Part shown: one piece after another, positions 855 to 61,728 of the stretch
Layout of the letters: each line of letters opens with the position of its first letter
Numbering within the stretch: position 1 is the stretch's first letter
IMG/VR virus record: IMGVR_UViG_3300024999_000030
Coordinates: 268,731 to 332,730 of that record
Length of the DNA: 64,000 nt
Strand: one strand, 5' to 3'
Notes under the pieces: model-generated
Database searches by the model: none
Seen by the model: only the letters and a program-made list of their open reading frames with translations
Told to the model about the DNA's origin: nothing
Translations under genes and position numbers: made by a program

Positions 855-2081
855 ATGTGGTCAATATTTAAACAAGCAAAACCTGTTTCAAGAAATTTAC
901 CTGATTGGTGTTTTATAGAATATCCCAAACAACTATGTGAAACTTTACATCGCCTATACGTGAGAGCTTATGATAGTCAAATTCTTTCTGGTATGAATCC
1001 CAATGCATTTGTTGATAACATTGGTAAGTTGGGAAGGCTTGAAATTTTACCAAGCCAAAATATAATTTCATCTATCGAAAAATCAGCATATATATATGCG
1101 TCTCTTTTTGGAAATCGAGGTATAGATATACATCCTAATATTCTTAATTTTTTAAATTCTCCAGAACACATTGACACATATGTTCTTAATACTCTTTTTA
1201 GAAAGTTATCTGGAACTCGTAATAATTCTGGAACCCATCTTTTTAGAAGCGGCATAGCTCAAAACTTACTAGCTGATAATATAGCTATGTGCGTATCTGG
1301 ATTAAATACTAATGTGATTGACACTATTCCAAATGAAACATTTAATGGTCCATATTCGTCAATCAAAAAAGAACTTAGTGTGTGGTCTATGGCTGTATTA
1401 CCTTTAGTATATGAATATTTTGATGCGATGAAAATTGCAGATGAATATATAAGAGTAAGAGCTTTAGAATCAGAAGTTCCAGCATTATGTGTTCACCCTA
1501 TGTGTTTAAAAACTTTTAAAATAGATAAACGTATTGTTGATTTATTTAAGTTCTATGTTGTAGATGGCAATAAAATGATTGCTACTTTCTGTTGTGATGC
1601 TCACGCTACTGCCGCTAAAGATAATGGCATTAATTATTTAACTGAACACGTTAATTTTGTATCCGGTCTTAATAAAAATACTAATATTAAATTTGGGCGC
1701 ATTAATAAAAACATGTTTTCTGTGGGCTGGGATAAATGGAAAGAACGAGATTGTATTGTTACATATATAGAATACCCATTATGTCGTCAACCATTTGTAG
1801 CGGAATTAAATAATATTATTGCTTCGGTGTGTGATGATAATAAATGTAGTCCATATTACCCTAGGCTTTACACTCCATTGGAGATTTATAACACAATTTC
1901 TCAATGCACTGTAGCTGAATTATCTAGTTGGCGAGAGTTCTTCATGGCCCATGGTTTAAGCGTTGATGTTGTTGCGTCTAAAAATGAGCGTGAAATATTA
2001 CAGAGAATGAGAGAAACATGGGCTCAAGATAAAGACTTTGGGTTCTTTTCTATGGATGAAAAATTTAAGAAAAACTATTAA
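855..2081 (+). CDS. Hypothetical protein (408 aa) with a Cys/His cluster
   Basis: Long ORF with GGAG RBS. Contains CVHPMC...CCDAH; no recognisable family. Confidence 0.8.
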   Translation: MWSIFKQAKPVSRNLPDWCFIEYPKQLCETLHRLYVRAYDSQILSGMNPNAFVDNIGKLGRLEILPSQNIISSIEKSAYIYASLFGNRGIDIHPNILNFLNSPEHIDTYVLNTLFRKLSGTRNNSGTHLFRSGIAQNLLADNIAMCVSGLNTNVIDTIPNETFNGPYSSIKKELSVWSMAVLPLVYEYFDAMKIADEYIRVRALESEVPALCVHPMCLKTFKIDKRIVDLFKFYVVDGNKMIATFCCDAHATAAKDNGINYLTEHVNFVSGLNKNTNIKFGRINKNMFSVGWDKWKERDCIVTYIEYPLCRQPFVAELNNIIASVCDDNKCSPYYPRLYTPLEIYNTISQCTVAELSSWREFFMAHGLSVDVVASKNEREILQRMRETWAQDKDFGFFSMDEKFKKNY

Positions 2082-2083
2082 TA
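2075..2083 (+). promoter_or_regulatory. CTATTAATA motif (candidate phage late/middle promoter) upstream of the sigma gene
   Basis: Exact copy of the motif found in several other intergenic gaps. A TATAAT at 2090-2095 is an alternative -10. Confidence 0.4.
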
Positions 2084-2107
2084 AAACTGTATAATGTAGG
2101 AGGAAAG

Positions 2108-2926
2108 ATGGCTGGAGATTCCCTTTCTAAACTGGTTGAACAATATTCGCAAGTCTATGGCAGAAAACGCCTTACTAATCAGGAAATGTTCGACAAGATC
2201 AAAGAGTTTCAGGCTACTGAAGATGAAGCGGCTATGATTGAAATGATTGGTGCTAATATTGGTCTCATAATTAAAGACACCTATAGTATTGTTAAGGATT
2301 ACACTCAAGTTGAATCGTATATTGGTAGTGCCATCATTGGCTTTATCGAAGGTGTTAAACATTTTGATGTTGCTAAAAGTGCAGGTTTAACTAATCCAAA
2401 TGGTTATATTTTTGAATGGGTTAGAGCGATGATTCATAAAGATTTTTATAAGGATAAGGCATTTTTATCTGGTCTCACTGGTAAAAATAAAATGATTGTT
2501 AATGCTCTTATCCAGGCAGAGAAGTCTGGGACTCTTTCTACGCCGGATCTTATCGAATCTGTGGCAACTCAATTAAACGAGGATAAGAAAACCGTAACCA
2601 CCGTTCATGCCACCATTGGATCTAAAATTAGTTTGTCTCATATGGACGGTAATGACGTAGTTGATATTCATTATGTTGAACATAATCCAATGGCTGCTGT
2701 TAACATGGCTCATATTAAAACTTCTTTGATGCCTGTTCTTAAAGAAATTTTAACTGAGAGGGAGTTTGATACTGTTCTGTCGCGTATTATGGACGATGAA
2801 ACTTTAGAGACCATTGGTAAGCGTTATGGTGTGTCCAAAGAGGCTGTTCGAATTTATGAAAAGACTGCGTTTAAGAAGCTTCGTGGTGACCATCGGGTCA
2901 AGGCGTTTTTCAATGCCCTGGATTAA
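2108..2926 (+). CDS. Phage sigma-70-family RNA polymerase sigma factor
   Basis: Region 2-like IGANIGLIIK...IGFIEGVKHFD...YIFEWVRAMI and region 4.2 HTH ETLETIGKRYGVSKEAVRIYEKTAFKKLR. AGGAGG RBS. Confidence 0.88.
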   Translation: MAGDSLSKLVEQYSQVYGRKRLTNQEMFDKIKEFQATEDEAAMIEMIGANIGLIIKDTYSIVKDYTQVESYIGSAIIGFIEGVKHFDVAKSAGLTNPNGYIFEWVRAMIHKDFYKDKAFLSGLTGKNKMIVNALIQAEKSGTLSTPDLIESVATQLNEDKKTVTTVHATIGSKISLSHMDGNDVVDIHYVEHNPMAAVNMAHIKTSLMPVLKEILTEREFDTVLSRIMDDETLETIGKRYGVSKEAVRIYEKTAFKKLRGDHRVKAFFNALD

Positions 2927-3098
2927 ATAATGAAAAAGATATATAGTTCATGTGGGTTAAGTAAACCATTATCATGCTTAACTCGCATGACTATATATCG
3001 AATCATAAATAAAATTAAAATAGGAGGTTATATCTTACGAAAAGAAACCTCAAAGAAAGATAAAATAATAAAATAAATTTACCTAGAGGGGTACTCTT

Positions 3099-4352: not shown

Positions 4353-4374
4353 AATAAATTACTTAGTTAAGTTG

Positions 4375-4404: not shown

Positions 4405-4425
4405 TGTCTTAATTTGGAGGCACAT

Positions 4426-5824: not shown

Positions 5825-5853
5825 TTGACTTTTTAATTTATGTATATTATATT
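5825..5853 (+). promoter_or_regulatory. Sigma-70-type promoter TTGACT-N17-TATATT
   Basis: TTGACT 5825-5830, TATATT 5848-5853. One of five exact copies. Confidence 0.85.
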
Positions 5854-8619: not shown

Positions 8620-8648
8620 TTGACTTTTTAACATAATAATCTTATATT
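8620..8648 (+). promoter_or_regulatory. Sigma-70-type promoter TTGACT-N17-TATATT
   Basis: TTGACT 8620-8625, TATATT 8643-8648, followed by an AGGAGGAG RBS. Confidence 0.85.
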
Positions 8649-8669: not shown

Positions 8670-8891
8670 ATGGCTAAAGTGTATGTAAGAGATGGTGAGC
8701 CGATTGATAGAGCGTTAAAGCGTTTTACTAATGCAGTATCTAAAGATGGGATTCTTCGTGAGCTTAAGATGAGGGAATATTTTCTCACTGCAACTCAAAA
8801 GAAGAGAATTAAAAAAGAAGAAGCTAGAAAACGTTTCATGAAAAATCTTAAAAAGAAGTTTTCTAAGGAAGACTCACTAAGTAAACGCTAA
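8670..8891 (+). CDS. rpsU: 30S ribosomal protein S21 (phage-encoded)
   Basis: MAKVYVRDGEPIDRALKRF...GILRELKMREYF...KKRIKKEEARKR matches the bS21 pattern. 73 aa, basic. Confidence 0.92.
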   Translation: MAKVYVRDGEPIDRALKRFTNAVSKDGILRELKMREYFLTATQKKRIKKEEARKRFMKNLKKKFSKEDSLSKR

Positions 8892-9064
8892 TGGTTGATA
8901 ATCATATTGACGAAGTCAAACTTAAATTTGCTAATATAAGACAGGCTATCAAAAACTTACCAATCGATGAAGAAGTTAAGGAACAGCTAAATAAAATTTT
9001 ATTTTCTCAGCTAAGGACAATCATAGCATATGTCGGATCAACCGAAGAAAAGCAAACTAGATAA
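8891..9064 (+). CDS. Small hypothetical protein (57 aa, below the ORF-track cutoff)
   Basis: TAATG overlap with the rpsU stop. MVDNHIDEVKLKFANIRQAIKNLPIDEEVKEQLNKILFSQLRTIIAYVGSTEEKQTR fills the gap. Confidence 0.6.
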   Translation: MVDNHIDEVKLKFANIRQAIKNLPIDEEVKEQLNKILFSQLRTIIAYVGSTEEKQTR

Positions 9065-9695
9065 AAAATTAGTAGACGAAATAAAAAAAGAAACAGATAT
9101 CCTCAAGCTTGTAGAAGACTTGGGGCTTAGTGTTATTAAGTCTGCGGGTGATCGATGGATTACCCATTGTTTATTTCATGACGAACGGACTCCCAGTATG
9201 ACCCTATACAGGGAGTCAAATAGTTTTTATTGTTATGGGTGCACAGAAAGTGGTGATGTAATATCTTTACTGCAAAAAGCAAAGAACCTCTCATTTATGA
9301 ATGCTGTTAAATTTTTAGCCGAGAGAGGCGGCATAGATTTAGAATTCTCTAAAAAAGCCACGTTCAATTGGGACGGATACGGCGAATACTCTGAAGAGCC
9401 CGGTACCGCGCTCGACTACGAAGACATGTTTACTTTTGTTGCCATAGAAACTCGCAAGCTCATACAGCAAATCAAACAGACTTTCACAGAAGAATCTGTG
9501 GAGTTTAGCGAGGCTATGTCTTCGATGGAGAGTATTTACCAGAAGTTTGACAACGCCGATATGATTGGTGTAAAGACGATGGCACTCTCTCAGCTTGAAG
9601 ACTTAGCAAACGAGCTAAGGGAGATATTAAATGAAAGTGGGAGTAATCGGGGACATTCACCTCGGGGCATCGTATCACTTCGGACACACTCTTAA
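9030..9695 (+). CDS. Stand-alone CHC2 zinc-finger protein (DnaG primase zinc-binding domain plus acidic helical tail)
   Basis: CLFHDERTPSM...FYCYGC...GDVISLLQ...LSFMNAVKFLA. No TOPRIM domain follows. Confidence 0.85.
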   Translation: MSDQPKKSKLDKKLVDEIKKETDILKLVEDLGLSVIKSAGDRWITHCLFHDERTPSMTLYRESNSFYCYGCTESGDVISLLQKAKNLSFMNAVKFLAERGGIDLEFSKKATFNWDGYGEYSEEPGTALDYEDMFTFVAIETRKLIQQIKQTFTEESVEFSEAMSSMESIYQKFDNADMIGVKTMALSQLEDLANELREILNESGSNRGHSPRGIVSLRTHS

Positions 9696-12968: not shown

Positions 12969-12977
12969 CTATTAATA
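12969..12977 (+). promoter_or_regulatory. CTATTAATA motif (candidate late promoter)
   Basis: Exact motif in the gap after sbcC, heading the 13021-21565 operon. Confidence 0.55.
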
Positions 12978-17371: not shown

Positions 17372-18060
17372 AAGAGTTTGCATATGTAGTTTCCAGACTC
17401 AAAACAGCCGCTCAACAAACCGGTGAAACTTGCTATATAGTTGGTGGAGCCGTGAGAGATATAATATCTCTTAAGAAGATTAAGGATGTTGATACGGTGG
17501 TGGCAATAAATCCTGAAAAATTTGCCTCAGCATTAGCCTCTACAACGGAGGGAGCAACCGCAGAAGAGGTTCATGCTCCATTTCCATTGTGGTCAGTGGA
17601 TATTAGCGACGTGTCTGTAGATGTAGTTGGGTTAAGAGGAAAGAGTCTTCAAGAAGATATTCAACATAGAAATTTTACTATCAATACAATATACTATGAC
17701 GTAGTAAGAGATAGGTTTGAAGATCCAACTGGAAAAGGGTTTACTGATCTTTATAATGGAGTAATTAATACTGTTACTCCAGATTCTTTTGTTTTTTTTA
17801 GTTCTAGTCCACATGAAATTAATAGCATATTTATAGCAATAAGATTAGTAGCGGATTCCGGATTTAAATTAAGTGAACAATTAAAAAGCGGAATTAGGAA
17901 AGCCTTAGAGCATGGCCTCATTCCCGCTGAGTTATCTAAGAGATCTAAAAAGGAAATACTAAGAACTAGGCTTTCACATAATTTTAAGACCAAAGCTCTC
18001 CCCATAATTGAAGAGCTTGGTTTGGAGCATTTTTATGAAGCTGCCGCTGTTTCTCCATAA
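17368..18060 (+). CDS. Short class II tRNA nucleotidyltransferase/poly(A) polymerase-family head domain (divergent)
   Basis: YIVGGAVRD...DVD, EDIQHRNFTIN (canonical RRDFTIN), DPTGKGFTDL. Lacks the flexible loop and a clear EDxxR. Confidence 0.8.
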   Translation: MKEFAYVVSRLKTAAQQTGETCYIVGGAVRDIISLKKIKDVDTVVAINPEKFASALASTTEGATAEEVHAPFPLWSVDISDVSVDVVGLRGKSLQEDIQHRNFTINTIYYDVVRDRFEDPTGKGFTDLYNGVINTVTPDSFVFFSSSPHEINSIFIAIRLVADSGFKLSEQLKSGIRKALEHGLIPAELSKRSKKEILRTRLSHNFKTKALPIIEELGLEHFYEAAAVSP

Positions 18061-31568: not shown

Positions 31569-32310
31569 CCTTCATAGAGATTATTTTATGAGACGTGGGT
31601 ATAGTTCTGACGCTATGGATTCTTTTAGTGTCGGAACTTTTCCCTTAGATTTAATTGTTGCCTCATTAAACTGTAATCAGTTAATTAATCTTAAGATTTT
31701 ATACGCACCTAAGCCAGGTTCCACATTATATTATTCGGAGTTCAGGGATAGAATTATTATTCCAGTACATGATGCATATGGTAAGGTAGTGGGTATTACT
31801 GGGAGATTGTTAACAGAGGATCCAAATAGAGGTAAATATTACAACAGCGATTACCCAAAGGTATCTACATTATTTAATTTACATAGAGCTAAAAATGAAA
31901 TTATAAAATCTGGATATGCCGTAGTAGTAGAGGGTAATTTAGATGTGGTGGCTATGTGGGATGCCGGAATTAAAAATGTTGTGGCCTGTACTGGGGCATT
32001 TATTACTCCAAAGCAAGTTCGTAAGTTACTTAGGTATACCGATAAAGTTTTAGTGGCAACTGATAACGATAATGCAGGTCACGCTTCTTATACTAAGTTT
32101 CTTAAAAATTCAGCGTATTATATTGAAAACAAATCGCTTAGCTCTATTAGAATTATTCCTCCATTCGGCTTAAAAGATCCAGATGATTTTATTAAAAAAT
32201 ATGGAGCTAACACATGTCGGGAGTGGGTTGCCGCAGGCGCCCGGCATCTCACATGCAACGATGGCAACGATACTACTAGCTTCAAAGGAGTGTGGAATGT
32301 CTGTAAATAA
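31513..32310 (+). CDS. dnaG: DnaG-type primase catalytic/TOPRIM domain lacking the zinc-binding domain
   Basis: FRDRIIIPV, GITGR, KYYNS, LFNL, VVVEGNLDV, ACTG, ATDNDNAG, KDPDDFI. Confidence 0.9.
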   Translation: MCLDPISKLVELCHANLSNLHRDYFMRRGYSSDAMDSFSVGTFPLDLIVASLNCNQLINLKILYAPKPGSTLYYSEFRDRIIIPVHDAYGKVVGITGRLLTEDPNRGKYYNSDYPKVSTLFNLHRAKNEIIKSGYAVVVEGNLDVVAMWDAGIKNVVACTGAFITPKQVRKLLRYTDKVLVATDNDNAGHASYTKFLKNSAYYIENKSLSSIRIIPPFGLKDPDDFIKKYGANTCREWVAAGARHLTCNDGNDTTSFKGVWNVCK

Positions 32311-32887
32311 AGGACGCAGTAAGCGTTATCAATATAAGTTTAGAGAAATACCAGTGGAATCTATGGATGTTTTTTCCGATAACATGGCCCTTCACAATGC
32401 AGAAAATATATCTAGTGCACAAAAACAAAAGCAAAAAGAAGGAATTCTAGGTGCTATTTTTGAAATAGCAGACGAACAATTAACACAAAGACAAAAAGAT
32501 ATTTTGTATTGTAGATATGTTTTGGGCTTAACTCAGGTTGAAATAGGTAAGCGACTCGGAATTACTCAGAGTTGTGTTTCCCTTCAAATTAATGGTATTC
32601 CTAATTATACTTATTCTAAGAAACATGGTGGAATTTTACCTAAGCTTAAGAAAATGTGTGTTGGAGAAGCGGCTGTTGCCTCTGGGTCGGCTACAACTGA
32701 AGAGACAGACGCCCTTCTTAAAACAATCAAGAGTAGAATTAAAAAAGCTCATCCCGAATATACAGAAATAGATTTAACTAGAAAGGCAGTAGAGAGCTTA
32801 TCAAACATGGGGAAAATATCAGATTTATTTGAAATGTTAGTTAAAGATGACATTGAGTATGACGAAGAGGATCTTTCTCACACATAA
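32297..32887 (+). CDS. Sigma-70 region 4-type HTH protein (no region 2)
   Basis: LTQRQKDILYCRYVLGLTQVEIGKRLGITQSCVS. AAGGAG RBS before ATG 32297. Confidence 0.8.
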   Translation: MSVNKGRSKRYQYKFREIPVESMDVFSDNMALHNAENISSAQKQKQKEGILGAIFEIADEQLTQRQKDILYCRYVLGLTQVEIGKRLGITQSCVSLQINGIPNYTYSKKHGGILPKLKKMCVGEAAVASGSATTEETDALLKTIKSRIKKAHPEYTEIDLTRKAVESLSNMGKISDLFEMLVKDDIEYDEEDLSHT

Positions 32888-32892
32888 TCTTC

Positions 32893-32901
32893 CTATTAAT
32901 A
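32893..32901 (+). promoter_or_regulatory. CTATTAATA motif (candidate late promoter) at the start of the head block
   Basis: Exact motif in the intergenic gap at the replication/structural boundary. Confidence 0.6.
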
Positions 32902-32948
32902 ATTAAGTATACCATTGGCGTGAGCCATATTCTTTTGTGGAGGACACA

Positions 32949-33437: not shown

Positions 33438-33445
33438 GAGATGAT

Positions 33446-35214: not shown

Positions 35215-35227
35215 AATGGAGGATTAC

Positions 35228-36358: not shown

Positions 36359-36370
36359 GTGGGAGCCGTT

Positions 36371-39954: not shown

Positions 39955-39957
39955 TAA

Positions 39958-42465: not shown

Positions 42466-42467
42466 TA

Positions 42468-42475
42468 TATTAATA
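42468..42475 (+). promoter_or_regulatory. TATTAATA motif (candidate late promoter)
   Basis: Core octamer in the intergenic gap. Confidence 0.45.
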
Positions 42476-42510
42476 AGTTTATATCTAAATTGCAATGTTG
42501 GAGGAGTAAA

Positions 42511-43251
42511 ATGAAATATGAGATTGCCACTGATCTTCAGGTAAAGAGCGAAGCTAAAGAGCCTGTTGTCGCAGCAGAACTTTCTATTAACGATAAAATA
42601 AAGAAAGAAGCTTCTGGCCGCCACGTTTATGATGTAGACTCTGCTAGTGGGAAAGAGGCATACGGTAGAAGTCTTGATTCCGCTATTGAATTTCTGTGGG
42701 AAAAGGTAAATCGTAGTGTTGACGTGAGGGCAGATAATAAACTCTCTATTCAACGTGCAGCTAGCTATTATGGTGAAATTGATAAGGCTATTTCTACCAT
42801 CGTTCGTTCTGATGTAGCTGGTATAATGTCTAATGAAGATCTATCTAAGTTTGAAGAAATCCGCATTGCTATTAATAAAAAACATGAGGATGTTCTTAAA
42901 ACCGCATTAGCAGTACACAACAAACCATCTAACGATGAGTGTTTGGAATGTGGTACGTTACTATATGGCGGTAAATGCATTGCCTGTGAGGGTGATGGCG
43001 ATATGGTTAAAGAGGCAGGTTCCCCCGCATTACAATTCTTTGAGAGTGGTTTTATTGTTGGAGTTGCCACCGACATTATGAATTATGTTGTTACTTCAGG
43101 TATGAACTTAACTGATGCGGTTAACACTGCCAAAGAATCATTCGGACTTACAAAACGTGAGGAATATCGTTTGCGTAAATATCTTAACTATATGGGAATG
43201 GTTGCGCCGCAAATGATTTGGCTTCCTCCTTCGGAAACTAGATTTTCTTAA
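42511..43251 (+). CDS. Hypothetical protein with zinc ribbon, putative virion protein
   Basis: GGAGGAG RBS before ATG 42511. CLECG...CIAC; KEA and KTA motifs. Confidence 0.78.
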   Translation: MKYEIATDLQVKSEAKEPVVAAELSINDKIKKEASGRHVYDVDSASGKEAYGRSLDSAIEFLWEKVNRSVDVRADNKLSIQRAASYYGEIDKAISTIVRSDVAGIMSNEDLSKFEEIRIAINKKHEDVLKTALAVHNKPSNDECLECGTLLYGGKCIACEGDGDMVKEAGSPALQFFESGFIVGVATDIMNYVVTSGMNLTDAVNTAKESFGLTKREEYRLRKYLNYMGMVAPQMIWLPPSETRFS

Positions 43252-43269
43252 AAATGGGGGCTCTCACAT

Positions 43270-43830
43270 ATGGCAATAAAAACCTGGAAGGAGTTGCTAT
43301 CTGCCATAGATCCAACTCTGGACGCATCTAATATAGCTTTAACACAAATTTCTGCTAGTTTAGAACTGCCCGACGGAAGAAAGATTGACCTTCCAATCCG
43401 GGCAGATTCTACTGTAGATAGTCTTAAAGCAGCCTTTACTCTTCCTTCTCCCCCAAAAGAAGAGCCTGAACCTGAATCTCAACCACAGATTTTACCAACG
43501 GCTCCTAAAATAACAAGTAAAATGCGTCAGTTCATGAGAGAGTTTTTTGAAACTGAAGCTGATCAAAAAGAATTTATAGAGTTTGCTGCTTTTGATGATA
43601 AGGCTAAGCAGTTTTTTGGCGACGTGTCTAATCCTATAGAGGCCTATGAAACTGAATATCAAGCTATTCCTGGTGTTACAGATTTAGAAAAATTTAAGAA
43701 TTTCTTATATAATAAACCCACGCCCGCATCCCAACCTACCCCTGAGGCAAAAGTTGAGACGCAGCCTATCCCAGCTCCCGCTCTTACTAATAAATCGGTA
43801 GGCAAGGGCCCCAAGAAAAAGAAACAGTAA
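43270..43830 (+). CDS. Hypothetical Pro-rich protein
   Basis: 186-aa ORF with Pro/Glu linkers and a Lys-rich tail. Confidence 0.72.
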   Translation: MAIKTWKELLSAIDPTLDASNIALTQISASLELPDGRKIDLPIRADSTVDSLKAAFTLPSPPKEEPEPESQPQILPTAPKITSKMRQFMREFFETEADQKEFIEFAAFDDKAKQFFGDVSNPIEAYETEYQAIPGVTDLEKFKNFLYNKPTPASQPTPEAKVETQPIPAPALTNKSVGKGPKKKKQ

Positions 43831-43866
43831 GACAGATTAGTCCCCTATTATAAGACGGAGGAACGT

Positions 43867-49800: not shown

Positions 49801-52800
49801 CATGGTGAAGCTACGTATATTCCAGAAGAAGCTAAAAAACTATTTGAAGTCTTCGCTTCTATGGCAGGGCACCAATTAAATTCTACATCTCAGGCAGTAA
49901 GAATTGGAAACGATGAAGCTATTGATAAAGTTACGTCTGGAAATTATGATGCTTCATCTGAGCCCAGTCACAACGCATTTGTTGTGGATGCTATAAATCA
50001 AATTAACGAAAATCTGGTTTATAATGTTTTTGGGGCCACTGAAGCTAAGATGAAGTTTAATCCTAAAAAACCATTTGACACCGGGGCCATTCCAGTAGAT
50101 CAATTTTCTAACTTTACAGATGCTATGAAGGCCGCCATGAAGGCTCATAATATTAACACTTCTGATGATTTAATCGGAATGATTTATAATACCCGTAGAG
50201 ATTTTCAGTCTAGTGGTGAACAGTTGTATGATATTATTTGCAAAATGGTAACGTCAATGTTACCAAAGCAAGCCCCAGATTCAGGGGCTATGCCAGCTTC
50301 TCCCTCTTCAGACGCTGCTTGGAACTTCTATGTAACTCAAGATGGCGTTGACTCACTAGTACCAAAAGCCCTTAAAGATGAAATTATTAATGCGGATGTA
50401 GAAGATATATCTGTAGCTGATGTATTAGCAATGGCAGAAAAGGTTTTTGAAACGCTTTCTATTAAATTAACGGGTAAGGCATTAGATGATTTAGCTACAG
50501 TAAAGCCTAAACTTTCTATTGGACAAAAGGCATTAGATAAAAACTTTTCTACGTTGAAGGCTGATATTTCAAACTTAATTAATAATAAAGAAGAATTAGG
50601 CGATGATGAATACGCCACACAGCTTTATAATATGTATAGTAAAAATAATCGTCTTGTGGTGTTAAAATTTGTGGCCGATAACTACCAAACTATTGGAACA
50701 ACTCCTTTGGAGGCTTGGGACAAAATTGCCGCCATCATGAATAATAAATTATATTTAACGGATAAGTCTTCACAGACTATCGTAGATAAATTTAAGAAAT
50801 CTTTACATAAAACAGGGGGTAATAAAGAATATCCATTTGCGTCCACTGGCTCCTTTGATAATGAAGTTCATGATTTAGCATATCTTGCCACAGAAATAGC
50901 TATTACTTTATCATTACCTCATGGTAAAGTTACTGAAACATTTTCAGTTCCCGTGGACATTCAAAACAATCAAATGGACGTACAACGATATTATCGTACG
51001 GTAATGGCTACAAATGCAGAAAAACATGTGGCCACATTAAGAACAGATATTAAATCATTAACTAGTAAATATCAAGACTTGGTAAATGGAGCACCTGTTA
51101 AAGATACGGTGTTAGCCCTATCTAAAATTATTTTAGATAAGAAACACCGCTTAGATTTAGAGGGAGTGGCGTGCAAGACTCTCATTAGGCCTATGCCGTT
51201 ATCAGAAAGAATTGAAACTAATGTTTTAGAAGATGTTGCTAAAACAGTTTTAGTTTTACCAGCCCGTGCCCTTAAAAGCAGTGATGATAAAACTACCCAT
51301 TATATTGTTATGCAAGATTTAACTTTTAAAAAAATTACCTTAATTCCATATAAAAATCTACCCACAGACATAGCAAAAGAGATGAAAGACTCAGGAAGCG
51401 TCGTAGTGGAATTATATCCTGGAGCTGAAAGCGATATAGCAGTTTTACCAAGTGTCATGGGTTCTGATATTTCTTCAGCCTCTTCAGCTGTGGCTTCACA
51501 TCTCAACGAAGCCTTGGGTGATAAAGTTCCCACAGACAAAGCAGAAGCCCTTCTCGTTTTATTTGGCTATCAACTTAGTTCAATTATAATGGCATTAACC
51601 GATACGCTTACGACTTTTGAATCATATCGCATGGCTATTATTAAAAGAATGGGTTTCAATAGTGGGTCTTATGCGGTTATCAGTCCTTCATTATTGGAAA
51701 TCTCAGAAACAGTTCCAATTATTCAAAAGAATGATTTACCTGTTTCTTTTAAAGAGTTTTTATCTGACATGGACATGGAAGATCAAAATATATATTTAGA
51801 TAAAGAATCTTTGAAAGATTTAGTTAAAACTGTAGTGCCAGTTAAAGTGTTAAAGGTAGATAGGACTTTGAGTGGACGAAAGTGTGCTATTGTTTCTATA
51901 GACATTCCAGGTGAGGTGATTAAATCAAAAAGTGTCCCAACTGTACAAAAACCACCTAGCAGAAGAATTATTGCAAACGTACCATATGAATATTTATCTT
52001 CAGCCGCTGCGGAAAAAACATTACCTGGAGTATATTTTGCTGTTAGGGAAAGGTTAATTTATTCACTCAGTCATCCTATTCCCGGTAAAGAAGCCCTTCT
52101 TAAAAAATTTGAAATCGGGCCAACAGATCCAGCTATGATAAATACTACATGGTTACGTAAACATTTGAATGGTATTCAACAAGCTGAAGAAGCTGGTGCC
52201 ATATTACCTGGAACCACAACCCAAGCTAAACGTCTTTTGGATCGAAAGTTTGCTGAGCCGGCGCGTACAATTGAGCCTTTAATTGGTAAACTTTCAAAAT
52301 CTCCAGTTATTATTGCGCGTGATTTACACTCAACCGTTTTGGATGTGTTAAAGAGAACTTGTAAGGGAGATGAACAAGCATCGATGGATATAGATTCGCA
52401 CTTAGCTCCAATTATGCCTAAAATGTATTCTCTTACACCAGTTAAAACCAGAACATTGGCAAATGCATCTGGACAAAAAAGCATTCGTTTTGATAGTGGA
52501 TCCGAATTGGTTAATGCATATTGGTTGCCTTCTACAAATGCTGACGCTGATTTTCAGAAGAATATCGGTAAATATTATGATACGGCTAGGGCGATATACG
52601 GGGTGAAGAAAACCAAATCTGCTGGCCTTATCAAAGCTATGTCTGAGGCGACGATTATTGCTCCCGCTGAAAAAGCGTTGGCTTTATTAAATGAGTCTTT
52701 ATTGGTTGCAGAAGAAGTAAACGACGATTCAATGATTAAAATTTTATCCGCTGCAATTGAATCCATCCAAGATCATTTTTCTGATGATTTAGTTTCCAAT

Positions 52801-55800
52801 CAATCTTTAGTTCTCTTGACTAGGGCTCCTCTTGGTGATCGCTCTATTATTATACCAGTAAGTAAAAATATGTTTTGTTCATTACAACAGCTGATGGCTT
52901 ATTATACAAACTGGAGTACATTAAAGAGTAAATTAGTTATGACTCCAAAGCTAGCAGAAGTAATGTCCGGCGGCCAAGAACTGCCATGCTCATTTACTTA
53001 TTTGGAATCGTATGCGGATGGTAGTGAAATCAAAGTGCGTATCGCAGATATGGGAGATGGTTTTAAAGTGGTCCCCCATAAATTCATTTTAAAAAGCCCC
53101 ACCACTGGAGCTGATTTAGGTGTAGCAACTGGCGGGTCTAACTCATATTTAGAAGATAGCTCTGCTAGAGCAGATAAAGACTTTGTTAAATCTAAGGACG
53201 ATAAGGCGATTAAGGTATTAAACCCATCTGCCCTTTCTCGTATTAGAAATGTAAATGGGCTTAGATTAGTTGTCTATAATGGTCAGTCTTTTACTAAGAA
53301 ATTCGAAGCACCTATTTTACCAAATGCAATTAGTGGTATTAAAATTAAATTTGAACCTCAGCGTGCAATTGTAATGTCTGGAGATAGATACGAAATAGTA
53401 TCTGATGCTTCTGTGTCTCTCAATCCAGACTTTTCATTGCGGGCAACCAGAGAGCGCGGTAAACTGAAAGGCGGTGGTTACGACCTTAAGGTTAGCGATA
53501 GTCGAAGTACATTTGTTAGAACTATTTCTGGTGACGAGCAGCTTAAACGTATTAGAAGTATGATGGATAGGGATGCCACTATTTATGAAATACTGGGTGC
53601 TGAATTTGGCAACTTGGGCGATATTATTAAAGAACAAATGAATCAAATTGCCATTACACAGAAAGCACATCGCACTGCCGAACTAAGGCAAGAACAGGGT
53701 GGAGATGCAGATCTCTGCGCAGATTTAAGGGCCCTTGGTAGTAAGTTCCAAACCAAAGGTCGTGGATCAGATGAGCGCGTTATTGAGATTCCAGACAATA
53801 CAATTTTTGATGATTTAAATAAACTTAAATGCATTGGTATTGGTACTAAAATACAACCCCTAATCCACCCCACGATAGAGGGGGTGGAAGATACTCCCGC
53901 AGTGAATGCTTCTATAGCATTAAATACGATTGATGTGGTAAAGCGTGCTAAATTCAAGAGGGCTGGATTTGCTTCGGGTGGGGGTGTAAATCTTTTAAAC
54001 GATTTAATTGGTAAGAGAAAACCAGGCGCTACATCATCCCCATTACAGGCTTCTTTACAACATGTATACAATACCGTTCTTAATGATGGATGGAATGAAT
54101 TTATTAATAAATATGAAATGTCTGCAAGTAAACAATTTGCTAAGAAAAATCCATATATAAATTTAATCGATAACTATAAGAAACTATTAGAAGCTAAACA
54201 AAATGGAGTTTCTCTTGGGACTGAAGCCGATAGGCAATTTAAAGCTTTGAGTGCTGTAATTGGCGCTGGTAAATCTTATTTAAATATGTCTATGTCTAAG
54301 GTAGAAGAACTAATTAAAGACGATACCCATAAAGCTGTTTTGTCTAGGTTCCACGATATTACAGACATAGAAAAAATGATTACGAATAGCCATAAAGATG
54401 GACGAGGACAACACGCTTCACGTGTTTCAAAACAATTATTTCTTTTGGGATCCATTCTAGCTTATTATATTTATTTAGCTAAACATGAACCAACAGTAGA
54501 GTCAGCCGATGCTCTTAAATGGTACGAGCGTTTTCTTAAAACTGAAGCCCAAGGAATAGTATTTAATTTTATTAAGCAATTTGGGTTGTTGGATGCGGGG
54601 GCTAGATTGGGTATCACGGGCGTTAGGGGCAAATCTAAGAATTTATTTATTGCTAAATCACCAGATCTTGCAAACGTTACTCGGCAGCTAGAGGAAAATA
54701 TTAAAATCATAACCGATAGTATTGCTGCTAACGATGGCACAACTGGCTATGTAATGGGATTATCTAATTTCTTTGGTTTGATGCCTTTAAGTAATCGTGT
54801 TTTAATTAATGTATTGTTTAAAGATATTTCTCCCTTTGGTGTGAAACGGGATGAAAAAAATCCACAGGTGAAAGAGGTATCTGAAGCATTAAATAATTTA
54901 TTTCAAGAAATAATGCTGGGAGATAGTTCTGTATTACAATTGGACGCTAGCACTAATATGGCTATTGGTGAATTACCAGCCACATTTCTTCCAGAAAATT
55001 TCCGTAAATTATTAGCCATTGAAGAGGAATATATTCCAGAAGAAGAACTAGAAATGGATGAGGGTGAAGATTTAACACCTGAACAAATTGAAGCTTTGGG
55101 GCGCAATGCCGATATGTTAATTATACAATTTAAGAAAGCTATGCCTATCCGATTTGCTAAATTAATATCTAAGCCTCGAAAACTTAAGGTGACCACTATG
55201 AAATGTAAAACTTTTGGAGATACAGACTTAGTTACAGAACCATCAAGTCCCATGAATATTCCAGAAGATAATAAACGTAGACAAGAACAAGCCTCGTCTA
55301 AACTGCTGTTGTTTAAATATGCAGATGAAAATGTTATTGATGCTCAAATAGAAGAATTACGCATTGTGTTAGCTGAAAACAATAAAAACATGCAAGAAAT
55401 GAAAGAACAATGGACTAGGGTTCTTGTTAATTCTATAGACTTAAAAGACATAGATGAAAAAGAAAGAATCAAATTTGCAGAAGACACATTTAAAGATTTT
55501 ACTAAATTTATTTATAAGCGTGATAATCTTTATAAGAATGTGGATCAATTACCAGCTATGCTAGAAAAATTGTATGAAATTATATCTGGCGGTCATAAAT
55601 ATGATAAAATACCAACAGCTTTTATGCAAATGTTTTTTAGCTATAGGTCTCCAGCGTATAGTTTAATGCGTAGTATGGTGTCGTTATTTAATGACAATAG
55701 TTTTCTAGCTGAACAAAATGCTTTAATTGAAGATGTTATTTCATCTAATAGTTTAGATACATTTGAAGATGGAAATAAATCGATGGAAGGAGAGGATGCG

Positions 55801-55833
55801 CCAGAAGGCACTTTAATGAATCCACACACCTAA
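43867..55833 (+). CDS. Giant hypothetical protein (3988 aa), candidate internal/ejected virion protein
   Basis: Uninterrupted 11.97-kb ORF with GGAGG RBS and a near-match late motif CTATTATAA at 43845. No catalytic motif recognised. Confidence 0.9.
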   Translation: MAFTLYSAKGKEKETKTPKGLEEVETLFPGQGSLQSAQTALQATPKKPKAEKKELVKSKGKPKLTTKESPEALDLEESEQPEDTSSSLAETFEKAESITRKKGPYSFNANSQYEIDTDPYYRVFEHRGKTIISSQPDTYIVMDYKTGSYNVGYKLGDGSVSWSRLTSRSKVLVAKMVKALENVPSDPEAINNPNEPQGSMDWGQRLGKFLHLTKRAVAYGNAAIFNIYIASGEGIIPEPDWQNKTFVKSGEYYKPVGETWEPEEAFVWYKVIASVLGTPQECLLGMAKHRGTSTFDIYIADVDGSNSHKARIADIKLFNYISGDQIDITEINDYYEKFSNKESAKQVVSADTIATDLATEEVNKLDSSTFFFVDGNAPKRIITGTRYEILREGSKAYIKAASGPAKAFHSDLNLRTALNAESIPLSEIDQVARITNRKSGFYHADMKAKMENVIAQGHAVQFEIGSMGDDGTFYPTGKDEDVFWAIIPTGRDFYMEVSKIEGGSASITADTKTLEMVSTSPASPDQLKVVSKLISSVYPVFSKETYGDEALREQFSSLLITPPPNPLYGFDLTSKHKQSKELLLLFINYMFNNLEAKLTKDTDYAITSKENVLAKVDSYLGRVTKLDADSLAQLFFGSPITHINADYIDKFYEDIVGAGADQDLASTEEGLGQLRRRGKFVDSYIQSPMIGQQEAGKWFIKAVEAVTIEPSGIYVIEKTKHGTTKKKQNIYLAERNLDFESGTDTSRLPFGAVSFSMIDFRTGNIVANVMAKESGKYNFQEISKDDFIKAFYSSRPTQETLAQRLTSDLKGIGLTTPKAKTVSKQLVGQLAALLSDPEIIANILGVPEEDVATWLHGPDKLDEKILAETIAYFSSLLGEDKYMGPSVALELEKLVSQLTTKAKKFNAKDFIESAPTIAAELMLIVLNKLRGTDLMYKVATEARRSLDAYYNNTGTAAFVKVSTGLYSGPCAVFSDKKDESKIILYQEGRIYNIDSEDAKESLITNTISSKNVFYVASMGQTAVKADVTMVDKADRLAAENIAIKDIMTFVTSYNGDTISPADFIEFLQTTIVTKLNVKLSSNMLNKVGRMAAMPKDAFTQEKAQQIAKIFSAAAFIPRILGHIMIYDIAAGKSGQMLKIYRDVVTTNGFWAPVPSDWSVDPKVEKSGIVVYGNSRESYIKNLITATRPAPAFGDMETTIASMDRDWGTSPESQAKVYDFFRKVNYVSGMCLAKVVSFEDGEESGESEFQNIQIVNQKIQTFFMGPNKKSLASNLRYVIESGHKRLSKDVRLYDPSTLARKVAYWAMQNLHISASFIGLSSNSTVEFNRSSFVDLINAYLAMPEKFKADNLYTDALYAAIKVSLSRAMNIIMTDRRYQLERETILARIPEEYLSDDAVSRSKQVELVQYLTQALMSYWLSNLASISAPSGKMKVNQKFTGFEDLVRDPDEVVAGLAAASPEYLIGMLLWTLADNKVQRAVRSSLGGANTGITFQDTMQPDKLTLTQMQQLLHETLGSFTVSLMSILDKSGHILNKYYNVAILKDYNKSRIKNKDLSLRAFAEATINDEYRAAKIAEAWSPAFEEMKTRATVAEWKSSGVKGVMSPSFALASKFGAGAVIAQGMSDESHVNNGVPFLITAMQAMTKDHRFAFKMTADILEHEDFSETLPFAAQEIKRILEAGKFKYNYKNKLDADSLKKYLLNVYFEIRRRRQGAYYVRPEDSMATMEGQTTAFEEVVKELANKKDGLTKYSFGDIQKEFNFASLPHKTKKEFTPMDKFFEVFKKQLTESGMNHMGAFSSIMQTFNYSKNYASFPLLVYMMKRNLGTIPNLSDIQYNKDFFETMGRALAATVMDVSKLNTMTDAAARGMQKSFVSGGLNISTVISNIMAFVYCLNNPDIGQHLRELNKLDSAGRVSLNRKMMSTRYGISSHAKEVLGVPSVSVSPDFVGMLDQSRVSSLAEAIRAFSSRHQDIEDVVDYIHGEATYIPEEAKKLFEVFASMAGHQLNSTSQAVRIGNDEAIDKVTSGNYDASSEPSHNAFVVDAINQINENLVYNVFGATEAKMKFNPKKPFDTGAIPVDQFSNFTDAMKAAMKAHNINTSDDLIGMIYNTRRDFQSSGEQLYDIICKMVTSMLPKQAPDSGAMPASPSSDAAWNFYVTQDGVDSLVPKALKDEIINADVEDISVADVLAMAEKVFETLSIKLTGKALDDLATVKPKLSIGQKALDKNFSTLKADISNLINNKEELGDDEYATQLYNMYSKNNRLVVLKFVADNYQTIGTTPLEAWDKIAAIMNNKLYLTDKSSQTIVDKFKKSLHKTGGNKEYPFASTGSFDNEVHDLAYLATEIAITLSLPHGKVTETFSVPVDIQNNQMDVQRYYRTVMATNAEKHVATLRTDIKSLTSKYQDLVNGAPVKDTVLALSKIILDKKHRLDLEGVACKTLIRPMPLSERIETNVLEDVAKTVLVLPARALKSSDDKTTHYIVMQDLTFKKITLIPYKNLPTDIAKEMKDSGSVVVELYPGAESDIAVLPSVMGSDISSASSAVASHLNEALGDKVPTDKAEALLVLFGYQLSSIIMALTDTLTTFESYRMAIIKRMGFNSGSYAVISPSLLEISETVPIIQKNDLPVSFKEFLSDMDMEDQNIYLDKESLKDLVKTVVPVKVLKVDRTLSGRKCAIVSIDIPGEVIKSKSVPTVQKPPSRRIIANVPYEYLSSAAAEKTLPGVYFAVRERLIYSLSHPIPGKEALLKKFEIGPTDPAMINTTWLRKHLNGIQQAEEAGAILPGTTTQAKRLLDRKFAEPARTIEPLIGKLSKSPVIIARDLHSTVLDVLKRTCKGDEQASMDIDSHLAPIMPKMYSLTPVKTRTLANASGQKSIRFDSGSELVNAYWLPSTNADADFQKNIGKYYDTARAIYGVKKTKSAGLIKAMSEATIIAPAEKALALLNESLLVAEEVNDDSMIKILSAAIESIQDHFSDDLVSNQSLVLLTRAPLGDRSIIIPVSKNMFCSLQQLMAYYTNWSTLKSKLVMTPKLAEVMSGGQELPCSFTYLESYADGSEIKVRIADMGDGFKVVPHKFILKSPTTGADLGVATGGSNSYLEDSSARADKDFVKSKDDKAIKVLNPSALSRIRNVNGLRLVVYNGQSFTKKFEAPILPNAISGIKIKFEPQRAIVMSGDRYEIVSDASVSLNPDFSLRATRERGKLKGGGYDLKVSDSRSTFVRTISGDEQLKRIRSMMDRDATIYEILGAEFGNLGDIIKEQMNQIAITQKAHRTAELRQEQGGDADLCADLRALGSKFQTKGRGSDERVIEIPDNTIFDDLNKLKCIGIGTKIQPLIHPTIEGVEDTPAVNASIALNTIDVVKRAKFKRAGFASGGGVNLLNDLIGKRKPGATSSPLQASLQHVYNTVLNDGWNEFINKYEMSASKQFAKKNPYINLIDNYKKLLEAKQNGVSLGTEADRQFKALSAVIGAGKSYLNMSMSKVEELIKDDTHKAVLSRFHDITDIEKMITNSHKDGRGQHASRVSKQLFLLGSILAYYIYLAKHEPTVESADALKWYERFLKTEAQGIVFNFIKQFGLLDAGARLGITGVRGKSKNLFIAKSPDLANVTRQLEENIKIITDSIAANDGTTGYVMGLSNFFGLMPLSNRVLINVLFKDISPFGVKRDEKNPQVKEVSEALNNLFQEIMLGDSSVLQLDASTNMAIGELPATFLPENFRKLLAIEEEYIPEEELEMDEGEDLTPEQIEALGRNADMLIIQFKKAMPIRFAKLISKPRKLKVTTMKCKTFGDTDLVTEPSSPMNIPEDNKRRQEQASSKLLLFKYADENVIDAQIEELRIVLAENNKNMQEMKEQWTRVLVNSIDLKDIDEKERIKFAEDTFKDFTKFIYKRDNLYKNVDQLPAMLEKLYEIISGGHKYDKIPTAFMQMFFSYRSPAYSLMRSMVSLFNDNSFLAEQNALIEDVISSNSLDTFEDGNKSMEGEDAPEGTLMNPHT

Positions 55834-60648: not shown

Positions 60649-60651
60649 TGG

Positions 60652-60660
60652 CTATTAATA
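60652..60660 (+). promoter_or_regulatory. CTATTAATA motif (candidate late promoter)
   Basis: Exact motif right after the portal stop. Confidence 0.6.
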
Positions 60661-60703
60661 TAGTTGTGTTGTTTTGGGTCTTATTACTTATGGAGTAGTG
60701 TAA

Positions 60704-61555
60704 ATGAAATTAGCTTCTAACACGAGTCGTACATATAGCCTTGAGGAAATTAAATCCTTAAAGGTTTTATCTTCTAAACTTAGTGACCATGCACGTATTA
60801 TTGCTTCATTTGTTTCTGGTATTAAAAATAGCGATGTTACTAGATTAATTGCTAGCGATGAATTGATGAAAAAATTAACTGAGCTGGATGGAGAAGTAGA
60901 TAAAGCTAAAGATATGAAAGAATTAAATGCTTTATTGAGCGGTTCCATCGACTTGAGGGTATCTAATCAACTTGATGTTCCACAAAAAGAGGTAGAATCG
61001 GTATCAGCTAAAGCTAAAGAACAGGCAGCAGGAACACTTTTACAGCCTACTGGAAGTATTAGGGAGAATAAATCTATGAAAAATATTATTAAAGAAGCAT
61101 TAAACGATGCCCCTCCAATGCCGGTTCCAGATTCTCCAGCGGCAGCTGCTCCTCCACCATCCCAAGAAGACAACACCCTTGTTGCTATTTTAAATACTGT
61201 TAACCTTGGTCAATTTGTAGATGCTATGCAAGGTCAAAAAAATACAAATGTTCTTGCTGTTATGCAAGATTTGAAACAAGAATTAGATAATGCAGCTAAG
61301 ACGGCTGGATCTGAAGCTTTATTTGCATATGATTTAAGAGGTAAAGCTGCCGCAGCTCAACAGTCTGCCGAAGACTCTATGCAGTCGGTTGCTGATATGA
61401 AAAAACAAATTAACGTTGTTTTACAAGCACTTAAGAGTTTTATGGATTTTGCTAAAACTAATTCTCCAAGTCAACCTTTACAGTCTCTTCAGACCAACGT
61501 TGAGGCACTTATCTCTGGTATTAATGATGGCATGAAAGATGCCGATGTGAAGTGA
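60704..61555 (+). CDS. Hypothetical helical protein, putative internal head/scaffold-associated protein
   Basis: Starts MKLA|S; also contains IKEA and AKTA, Ala/Pro linker, coiled coils. Confidence 0.78.
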   Translation: MKLASNTSRTYSLEEIKSLKVLSSKLSDHARIIASFVSGIKNSDVTRLIASDELMKKLTELDGEVDKAKDMKELNALLSGSIDLRVSNQLDVPQKEVESVSAKAKEQAAGTLLQPTGSIRENKSMKNIIKEALNDAPPMPVPDSPAAAAPPPSQEDNTLVAILNTVNLGQFVDAMQGQKNTNVLAVMQDLKQELDNAAKTAGSEALFAYDLRGKAAAAQQSAEDSMQSVADMKKQINVVLQALKSFMDFAKTNSPSQPLQSLQTNVEALISGINDGMKDADVK

Positions 61556-61564
61556 GGAGGATAT

Positions 61565-61717
61565 ATGTTAGTTAAAACTGCAATTGTTGGCGAGGTAATT
61601 CTTTGTGACAAATGTGGGCATTGTCATGAACTCGAATCCCCTTGTTTGTTTGAAACTCCTGTTGAAAAAATAAAAACAGAGGAAATAATCGATCAGAAAA
61701 AGGGCCAGAACGATTAG
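61565..61717 (+). CDS. Small Cys/His-rich protein (50 aa, not in the ORF track)
   Basis: GAGGAGG RBS. MLVKTAIVGEVILCDKCGHCHELESPCLFETPVEKIKTEEIIDQKKGQND. Confidence 0.75.
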   Translation: MLVKTAIVGEVILCDKCGHCHELESPCLFETPVEKIKTEEIIDQKKGQND

Positions 61718-61719
61718 GT

Positions 61720-61728
61720 CTATTAATA
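61720..61728 (+). promoter_or_regulatory. CTATTAATA motif (candidate late promoter)
   Basis: Exact motif in the gap before the 61775 and protease genes. Confidence 0.6.

What the first reader, a model, noticed from the sequence alone, without database searches (positions are those of the whole stretch)
2075..61728. Candidate late promoter (C)TATTAATA with no -35
Seen: exact CTATTAATA at 2075, 12969, 32893, 60652 and 61720, the core at 42468, and near-matches at 43845 (CTATTATAA) and 22328 (GATTAATA). All are in or at intergenic gaps 25-56 nt before a start, mostly before head genes. My rough base-composition estimate is only 1-2 chance hits per strand in 64 kb, mostly expected inside genes. 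Established: T4 late promoters are a lone TATAAATA read by gp55. Inference: an analogous element read by a phage sigma. The copy before the sigma gene itself would make a positive-feedback loop.
Basis: partly seen in the sequence, partly recalled or inferred. Interest (0 to 1): 0.6.

Follow-up and report, generated by a model that had tools for sequence, protein, structure and literature searches.

The report
Phage-specific promoter CTATTAATA, no -35
The 9-base word CTATTAATA is a real, conserved, strand-specific signal in front of the non-early genes of an uncultivated 333-kb groundwater phage, most likely the promoter read by the phage's own sigma factor, which is a familiar kind of phage gene switch.

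Summary
The motif is real and far beyond chance. The window is the last 64 kb of a 332,730-bp phage genome with almost all genes on one strand. CTATTAATA is the most frequent 9-mer in its noncoding DNA: 17 copies, against 0.65 for words of the same composition. Nothing upstream is conserved, so there is no -35. Relatives keep the 9-mer at 8 of 8 orthologous intergenic sites (97% identity, against 35-41% just upstream). The intragenic copy at 42869 and the near-match at 43845 are not kept.

The motif precedes structural genes (scaffold-like plus major head, baseplate, virion proteins). It also precedes the sigma gene, ribonucleotide reductase, an exonuclease operon and tRNA arrays. It is therefore a general post-early class, not only late or head.

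A separate early class, TTGACT-N17-TATATT, exists. At tRNA arrays the 9-mer sits inside its spacer in a fixed register.

The gene at 2108-2926 is a sigma-70-family factor covering regions 2-4. Its rare homologues (39-81% identity) all carry exact CTATTAATA upstream, so autoregulation is plausible.

The start site cannot be mapped because no RNA runs exist. Extra conserved positions (T after N8, G after N15) leave two registers open. Verdict: a new member of a known kind, of moderate interest.

The parts
2075..2083 (+). CTATTAATA copy 24 nt before the sigma gene ATG. It overlaps the TAA stop of ORF 855-2081. A TATAAT hexamer lies 6 nt downstream.
   Evidence: Kept exactly in relative G006 although the upstream flank is unalignable. 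Exact copies also lie upstream of the sigma gene in L186, L187 and L189.
12969..12977 (+). CTATTAATA copy 4 nt after the SbcC-like stop and 43 nt before ORF 13021 (an unknown gene followed by an exonuclease operon).
   Evidence: Kept in G006 and after SbcC in L186.
32893..32901 (+). CTATTAATA copy about 47 nt before the ATG that opens the block of unknown genes 32937-43830.
   Evidence: Kept in G006 and G007 although both flanks have diverged.
42467..42475 (+). ATATTAATA, a variant copy about 35 nt before the ATG of ORF about 42511-43251.
   Evidence: The orthologous site in G007 reads exact CTATTAATA.
60652..60660 (+). CTATTAATA copy 3 nt after the portal stop and 43 nt before ORF 60704.
   Evidence: Kept in G007.
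61720..61728 (+). CTATTAATA(G) copy 46 nt before the baseplate-hub-like ORF 61775. A conserved 5'UTR hairpin begins about 16 nt downstream.
   Evidence: Kept in G007.
2108..2926 (+). Phage sigma-70-family factor of 272 aa, covering regions 2 to 4. It is the best candidate reader of the motif.
   Evidence: Pfam Sigma70_r4 1e-8. phrog_351 5.6e-12 and phrog_234 2.5e-4. PDB phmmer aligns residues 11-267 to E. coli sigma-70 342-607, best E 6e-10. Only 5 homologues found.
32183..32887 (+). Second sigma-like protein with a region-4 helix-turn-helix only, next to the primase gene. It is an alternative reader or a cofactor.
   Evidence: Pfam Sigma70_r4 1e-9. phrog_1740 and phrog_351. Orthologues at 30-35% identity in G001, G003, G004 and G005.
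5825..5853 (+). Context: an early-class sigma-70-type promoter, TTGACT-N17-TATATT. This is the other promoter class.
8620..8648 (+). Context: an early-class promoter, TTGACT-N17-TATATT, before the S21-like gene.
42869..42877 (+). Exact CTATTAATA inside ORF 42490-43251. Judged a chance coding occurrence and not part of the system.
   Evidence: The orthologous codons read CCATTAATA in G007.
43845..43853 (+). Judged not functional.
   Evidence: It lies 13 nt from the ATG and abuts the Shine-Dalgarno sequence. It is not conserved in G007.

Best explanation
CTATTAATA is the core of the phage's own promoter class.

Host core RNA polymerase most likely reads it when carrying the phage sigma-70-family factor encoded at 2108-2926. 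There is no -35 element.

The full signal is CTATTAATA-N8-T-N6-G. Transcription should start either 7-10 nt after the 9-mer or about 15 nt after it. In the first case the 9-mer holds a -10-like AATAnT. In the second case the 9-mer lies at -24..-16, with the T at -7 and the G at +1.

Because a copy sits in front of the sigma gene itself, the factor would reinforce its own synthesis once it is first made. The first copies could come from read-through or from the TATAAT just downstream.

What is shown: the enrichment, strand bias, position, conservation and gene context of the motif, and the sigma identity of the 2108 protein. What is inferred: promoter activity, which protein reads it, the start site, and the timing.
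For: Enrichment and direction.
- 17 of 22 + strand copies are noncoding, and it is the top intergenic word.
- C precedes 19 of 30 intergenic cores, while G follows only 5.
- Relatives use the non-palindromic forms CTACTAATA and CTATCAATA.

Position.
- Copies lie 24-91 nt before Shine-Dalgarno-led starts. They often come right after the previous stop or after an intrinsic terminator, as at genome 11763, 60327, 125573 and 140456.
- The Shine-Dalgarno sequence never begins less than 14-15 nt after the 9-mer.

No -35. Upstream columns carry less than 0.5 bit. Identity between orthologous sites is 35-41% upstream, 97% in the motif and 56-72% downstream.

Conservation. The motif is kept at 8 of 8 orthologous intergenic sites. 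It is lost at the intragenic copy and at the near-match.

A distinct early class exists, TTGACT-N17-TATATT, with about 30 copies.

No RNA polymerase was found. Pfam beta and beta-prime families gave nothing, and neither did the T7-type family, although that search had no positive control. The only DFDGD motif belongs to GyrB.

Sigma link.
- The 2108 protein aligns to sigma-70 regions 2-4.
- All contigs carrying a 2108-type sigma (81%, 42%, 39% and 40% identity) have exact CTATTAATA before it.
- Genomes with another sigma type use CTATCAAT (G001) or CTACTAATA (G002).
- G004 has no full sigma and lacks the motif.

Precedents, as described in the papers read. Kayvirus late promoters are a long -10 box without a -35, read by a phage sigma, and combined promoters also occur (PMC7698491). 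phiEco32 gp36 promoters are the single element tAATGTAtA (PMC8948821).
Against: - There is no transcript evidence. Only DNA runs hold this phage.
- The sigma has a region 4, which usually reads a -35. In the phiEco32/7-11 comparison, the sigma with a region 4 uses a bipartite promoter (PMC8948821).
- The sigma co-occurrence rests on few genomes, and the sigma types are not clearly orthologous.
- The T at N8 and the G at N15 have the same spacing as -7 and +1 of the early promoters. This fits a register in which the 9-mer is not the -10. That geometry has no close sigma-70-family precedent and could mean that a separate DNA-binding factor is involved.
- About 127 kb of the genome (141-268 kb) has few copies of either promoter class, so the promoter map is incomplete.
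Confidence: 0.6

Rival explanations
1. Activator or sigma-appropriation model. The 9-mer is bound by a separate phage DNA-binding protein, for example the region-4-only protein at 32183-32887, at about -24..-16. This protein recruits the host primary-sigma holoenzyme (or the phage sigma) to a minimal -10 whose only fixed base is the T at -7. Transcription starts at the G 15 nt after the 9-mer.
For: - T at N8 in 17 of 19 sites and G at N15 in 14 of 19 (purine in 17 of 19), with the canonical -7/+1 spacing.
- In fused promoters the 9-mer sits 3 nt before TATATT, so this T is the last T of the early -10 hexamer and the G is at the early start.
- 5'UTR hairpins begin 15-17 nt after the 9-mer.
- The four shortest leaders all place the Shine-Dalgarno sequence 15-16 nt after the 9-mer.
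- The region-4-like protein is conserved across the clade.
Against: - No A at the -11 position of that register (5 of 16 sites), which sigma-70-family melting normally needs.
- G004 keeps the region-4-like protein but lacks the motif.
- In pooled relatives, T two bases after the 9-mer (80%) gives a good AATAnT -10-like hexamer inside or next to the 9-mer.
- T at N8 is weaker in distant relatives, 2 of 4.
Confidence: 0.22
2. Operator model. The palindromic core TATTAATA is the binding site of a dimeric phage repressor or switch protein, which turns off early promoters. It is not itself a promoter.
For: - The core is a perfect palindrome.
- In 3-4 early promoters it lies inside the spacer.
- Intergenic regions with an early promoter hold a copy with at most one mismatch more often than others (odds ratio 3.2, p 0.02).
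Against: - Strong asymmetry: C before the core in 19 of 30, G after it in 5 of 30.
- Relatives use non-palindromic variants at orthologous sites.
- Most copies stand alone in 36-90 nt gaps before structural genes with no other promoter-like motif.
- Conservation extends downstream only.
Confidence: 0.06
3. RNA-level signal. CUAUUAAUA in read-through transcripts is a processing, stability or translation signal for the downstream gene.
For: It is strand-specific and intergenic, lies upstream of Shine-Dalgarno sequences, and its conservation continues into the 5'UTR.
Against: - It occurs directly after intrinsic terminators.
- It lies inside the spacers of early promoters, upstream of their start sites.
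- It also precedes tRNA arrays.
- Its distance to start codons is variable.
Confidence: 0.05
4. Chance, or an A+T-rich composition artefact.
For: In the window alone the excess is modest: 7 copies against 2.5 expected.
Against: - About 30-fold excess over same-composition words and over a Markov model in noncoding DNA. Noncoding DNA is not more A+T-rich than the genome as a whole.
- Perfect conservation at orthologous sites.
Confidence: 0.01

Closest known systems
Kayvirus (Twort-like Staphylococcus phage) late promoters, as described in PMC7698491
   Same: - Two promoter classes only: strong sigma-70-type early promoters plus a class with one long A+T-rich box, no -35, attributed to a phage sigma.
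- Some promoters combine a -35 with the late box, and some units are served by both classes.
- The 2108 sigma has a weak full-length tblastn match to a Kay-type Staphylococcus phage (25.5% identity, E 5e-4).
   Different: - The box sequence differs: TGTTATATTA there, CTATTAATA here.
- Here the class also serves DNA-metabolism genes and tRNA arrays.
- The additional conserved positions, T at N8 and G at N15, are not described there.
- Start sites are mapped there and unmapped here.
[quoted passage not shown]
   Same: A single 9-bp consensus (tAATGTAtA), no -35, read by a phage sigma on host core polymerase, serving both middle and late genes.
   Different: gp36 lacks region-4 homology, whereas the 2108 protein has a clear region 4. 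The related phage 7-11 sigma, which does have a region 4, uses a bipartite promoter. The sequences are unrelated.
T4 late promoters (TATAAATA, with gp55, gp33 and the gp45 clamp), reviewed in PMC2988020
   Same: A lone 8-9-bp A+T-rich element, one base different from the core here, with no -35, placed before structural genes. The N-terminal half of the 2108 protein weakly matches the 'late sigma' family phrog_234.
   Different: - The exact T4 motif is at chance level here.
- No gp33 homologue or clamp coupling was tested.
- The class here is not restricted to late genes.
Bacillus phage G (Donellivirus), the closest cultured relative
   Same: Major head protein 54% identical. A huge genome with a pol III-type polymerase, no RNA polymerase, and an annotated sigma, gp3.
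   Different: The 40 kb around the phage G head genes shows no intergenic CTAYYAAT. gp3 is not detectably orthologous to the 2108 sigma.

Membership tests
T4-type late promoter system | The consensus TATAAATA is enriched before late genes | tested here: not met
   TATAAATA: 12 copies in the window against 12.5 expected. CTATAAATA: 0 noncoding and 4 coding copies genome-wide. The enriched word is TATTAATA.
   The 2108 protein has a region 4 (Pfam 1e-8) and aligns to sigma-70 regions 2-4. The phrog_234 match is weak.
T4-type late promoter system | gp33 co-activator and activation by the sliding clamp | not tested
   No search for gp33 or gp45 homologues was made. Activation cannot be tested in silico.
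Single-element phage-sigma promoters (phiEco32 or Kayvirus type) | One conserved box and no -35 or UP element | tested here: met
   Upstream information is below 0.5 bit. Identity between orthologues is 35-41% upstream and 97% in the box.
Single-element phage-sigma promoters (phiEco32 or Kayvirus type) | A phage-encoded sigma-70-family factor and no phage RNA polymerase | tested here: met
   Sigma. No RNA polymerase families found. The DFDGD hit is GyrB.
Single-element phage-sigma promoters (phiEco32 or Kayvirus type) | Transcription starts 6-8 nt downstream of the box | not testable with these tools
   No RNA runs hold this phage. Sequence features allow a start at 7-10 nt or at about 15 nt.
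Single-element phage-sigma promoters (phiEco32 or Kayvirus type) | The box depends on that sigma | tested here: inconclusive
   The exact box co-occurs with the 2108-type sigma in 5 lineages. Variant boxes go with another sigma type, and there is none in G004, which lacks a full sigma. The sample is small and there is no biochemistry.
Host sigma-70-type promoter | TTGACA-like -35, a 16-18 nt spacer and a TATAAT-like -10 with A at -11 and T at -7 | tested here: not met
   Solitary sites have no -35. The phage's own sigma-70-type class is a separate set, TTGACT-N17-TATATT.

The most novel reading that the evidence does not exclude
The 9-mer is not a -10 analogue. It is a promoter element of a new geometry, at -24..-16, one helical turn upstream of a vestigial -10 that keeps only the T at -7, with the start at a G. 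A rare sigma subfamily of uncultivated huge phages would read it. The element can be dropped into the spacer of a host-type promoter, so that one start site serves both early and late polymerase forms, as at the tRNA arrays. The box variant would co-evolve with the sigma type across the clade: CTATTAATA, CTATCAAT or CTACTAATA.
Probability: 0.25. Interest if true: 0.65.

Novelty: new member of a known kind. Interest (0 to 1): 0.45.

Why it matters
The result gives a testable transcription map for a clade of huge, uncultivated phages. At least 375 related head-protein loci exist in IMG/VR, and nothing is known about their gene regulation.

The map has two promoter classes and a candidate sigma factor that likely autoregulates. 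It also shows a compact design in which both classes share one site before tRNA arrays.

The box and the sigma could be tested in vitro without the unknown host. The box also helps to define operons and gene timing in related metagenomic genomes. Conceptually it repeats a known phage strategy, so the advance is incremental unless the unusual register proves true.

Tried and rejected
- Transcript evidence. Only groundwater DNA runs hold the sequence and there are no RNA runs.
- A phage RNA polymerase. Pfam beta, beta-prime and T7-type families gave nothing. The T7-type search had no positive control. The only DFDGD motif lies in a 1014-aa protein that is GyrB with an intein.
- Stop-codon recoding, prompted by a tRNA with anticodon CTA. 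ORF lengths do not improve under any reassignment, so the standard code was kept throughout.
- The short-ORF region at 141-235 kb yields no third promoter word, only GATACTGG/CCAGTATC boxes.
- Nucleotide search of the phage collection found no match.
- The 2108 sigma was not found by single-sequence search in five large relatives.
- Phage G gp3 is not detectably orthologous to either sigma-like protein.
- Phage G shows no CTAYYAAT in 40 kb, and G004 has other intergenic words. The box therefore belongs to a subclade, not to the whole head-protein family.
- The terminator scan upstream of the sites under-called hairpins whose stems run into the T tract. The clear cases were read by eye.
- In G002 the sigma gene has no intergenic box before it.
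- The block 32937-55833, including the 3988-aa ORF, has no Pfam or PHROG match, so 'head genes' could not be verified there.
Full report
**Setting**

The window is the last 64 kb of a single 332,730-bp virus record (IMG/VR, CheckV 100% complete). GC content is 38% and almost every gene lies on the + strand. Only groundwater DNA runs hold the sequence.

The closest cultured relative is Bacillus phage G, with a major head protein 54% identical. IMG/VR holds at least 375 related head-protein loci, some on contigs of 316-441 kb.

No RNA polymerase family was detected. Pfam beta and beta-prime families gave nothing. The T7-type family gave nothing either, but that search had no positive control. 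The one DFDGD motif in the proteome belongs to a GyrB that carries an intein. The phage therefore most likely depends on host core polymerase.

**The observation**

A sixth exact copy, at 42869, is intragenic.

In the window alone the excess is modest: 7 copies against 2.5 expected, reached by 1 of 100 shuffles. Across the genome it is overwhelming.
- 22 + strand copies, 17 of them fully in the 9% of the genome that is noncoding.
- An unbiased k-mer scan ranks TATTAATA and CTATTAATA first, above the Shine-Dalgarno words.
- The 630 words of identical base composition average 0.65 noncoding copies (sd 1.0), and a Markov-1 model gives 0.56.
- Noncoding DNA is no more A+T-rich than the rest of the genome.

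**Anatomy**

The core is a palindrome, but the element is directional. C precedes 19 of 30 intergenic cores, whereas G follows only 5. One-mismatch variants are barely enriched.

Nothing upstream is conserved; every column carries less than 0.5 bit.

Sites lie 24-91 nt before Shine-Dalgarno-led start codons. They often come right after the previous stop codon. In several cases they come right after an intrinsic terminator, at genome 11763, 60327, 125573 and 140456.

Two further positions downstream are conserved:
- a T eight bases after the 9-mer, in 17 of 19 sites (p 1e-7);
- a G fifteen bases after it, in 14 of 19 sites (purine in 17 of 19).

**Gene context**

The element precedes:
- a scaffold-like gene plus the major head gene;
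- a virion protein;
- baseplate genes;
- a spanin-like gene;
- the genes after portal;
- the ribonucleotide reductase gene;
- an AAA ATPase, with GyrB further down the same gene row;
- an exonuclease operon;
- the sigma gene.

It is therefore a general post-early class rather than a head or late class.

**The second promoter class**

A second class, cTTGACTTTT-N13-TTATATT with a fixed 17-nt spacer, has about 30 copies.

At the tRNA arrays and before a homing endonuclease, the 9-mer sits inside this spacer. Three sites have the identical register, 5 nt after the -35 and 3 nt before the -10. A fourth is shifted by one. Other sites place the two classes in tandem. These look like promoters built to work both early and late. 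Comparable combined promoters are described for Kayvirus (PMC7698491).

**Comparative evidence**

In relatives with 70-78% nucleotide identity in the flanking genes (G006, G007), the 9-mer is kept at 8 of 8 orthologous intergenic sites. Two A-variants in this phage read C in the relative.

Identity anchored on the motif:

| Segment | Identity |
|---|---|
| 40 nt upstream | 35-41% |
| 9-mer | 97% |
| next 9 nt | 72% |
| further downstream | 56-60% |

This is the footprint expected of a promoter followed by a transcribed leader.

The intragenic copy at 42869 and the near-match at 43845 are not conserved.

In 64 non-redundant loci from more distant relatives, the top intergenic words are CTACTAAT(A), CTATCAATA and CTATTAATA. 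There are 60 intergenic sites in 33 loci. Their consensus is AaATCTAYYAATAnTt...TATA, followed by a purine-rich stretch. The same spot upstream of the scaffold-like gene keeps the box in 14 of 25 lineages.

The box is absent from G004 and from 40 kb of phage G. It therefore marks a subclade.

**Who reads it**

The 2108-2926 protein has a Pfam region 4. It aligns along its length with regions 2-4 of primary sigma factors.

Its subfamily is rare, with five homologues found. The three homologues at 39-42% identity lie in the same gene order: sigma, PIN-PhoH, S21, primase, SbcD (SbcC is also seen on L186, the one contig that reaches that far). Each has an exact CTATTAATA 30-119 nt upstream of the sigma gene. 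One also has a copy after SbcC. No copy on these three contigs lies in coding sequence.

Other genomes fit the same pattern.
- G001 carries another sigma type, related to phage G gp3, and uses CTATCAAT.
- G002 carries the same other type and uses CTACTAATA.
- G004 has only the region-4-like protein that is orthologous to 32183-32887, and it lacks the box.

It rests on few genomes.

**Register**

Two readings of the geometry remain open.

*Reading A.* The 9-mer contains a -10-like AATAnT. The A at -11 is invariant, and the T at -7 is present in 80% of relatives. The start would lie in the TATA block 7-10 nt downstream, as in the T4, phiEco32 and Kayvirus precedents.

*Reading B.* The conserved T is -7 and the G is +1, which puts the 9-mer at -24..-16. 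Four observations favour it:
- the fixed register inside early promoters, where this T is the last T of TATATT and the G is at the early start;
- 5'UTR hairpins that begin at the G;
- four minimal leaders whose Shine-Dalgarno sequence begins exactly there;
- the canonical -7/+1 spacing between the T and the G.

Against reading B, there is no A at -11 in that register.

Sequence alone cannot decide between the two.

**Verdict**

This is a real, conserved, phage-specific promoter-like element without a -35. It most likely depends on the phage sigma and serves the middle and late genes. It is a new member of a known kind. The open question of register is the only route to something more unusual.

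Noticed in passing
genome 11061-17463, 30281-33549 and 179810-180473 (outside the window; loci L004, L005, L012): 29 tRNA genes in three arrays. One, at 14708-14783, has anticodon CTA (an amber suppressor type). ORF lengths give no sign of stop-codon recoding.
   Followed up: partly
genome about 168,700-181,000 (L012, L013): Repeated GATACTGG boxes and their inverse CCAGTATC lie in intergenic DNA. They often come in pairs 20-45 nt apart, just upstream of Shine-Dalgarno sequences. This is a separate regulatory or repeat element in a region of short ORFs that has few copies of either promoter class.
   Followed up: partly
window 43867-55833: A 3988-aa ORF just upstream of the large terminase, with no Pfam or PHROG match. 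The nine ORFs from 32937 to 43830 are equally unmatched.
   Followed up: partly
window 9030-9695 and 31513-32310: The DnaG-type primase appears split into two genes 22 kb apart. One carries the zinc-ribbon N-terminus and the other the catalytic core plus Toprim domain.
   Followed up: no
window 23711-24610 and 24567-27122: The pol III alpha-like polymerase is read as two overlapping ORFs that match consecutive parts of one profile, phrog_405 positions 43-346 and 333-1037. This could be a split gene, a frameshift or a sequencing error.
   Followed up: no
genome 134399-137443 and 121678-124647 (L010): GyrB carries an intein between residues about 493 and 831. The 989-aa ribonucleotide reductase matches its family in two stretches, which suggests another insertion.
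   Followed up: partly
window 8670-8891, 22365-23648 and 17368-21565: Translation- and RNA-related host-like genes: ribosomal protein S21, a trigger-factor-like protein, and poly(A) polymerase or CCA-adding-type nucleotidyltransferases.
   Followed up: no
genome 5460-5500, 37174-37190; window 61744-61758: Stem-loops start 15-17 nt after the 9-mer in the 5' leaders. Two of them are conserved in relative G007. They may be 5'-terminal stabilisers.
   Followed up: partly
loci L033, L036, L040, L041, L045, L055, upstream of the scaffold-like gene: A conserved GATCAAAGAC word lies in the long leader between the box and the scaffold-like gene in several distant relatives.
   Followed up: no
genome 7276-8281 (L004): A GIY-YIG/HNH homing endonuclease gene lies directly after the major head gene. 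It has its own fused promoter, TTGATT-N5-CTATTAATG-N3-TATATT.
   Followed up: partly
G004 (loci L112-L131): This complete 428-kb relative lacks the box. Its most enriched intergenic words on the coding strand are GTTAGTTTAAT(G) and TGATATATA, possibly its own promoter signals.
   Followed up: no
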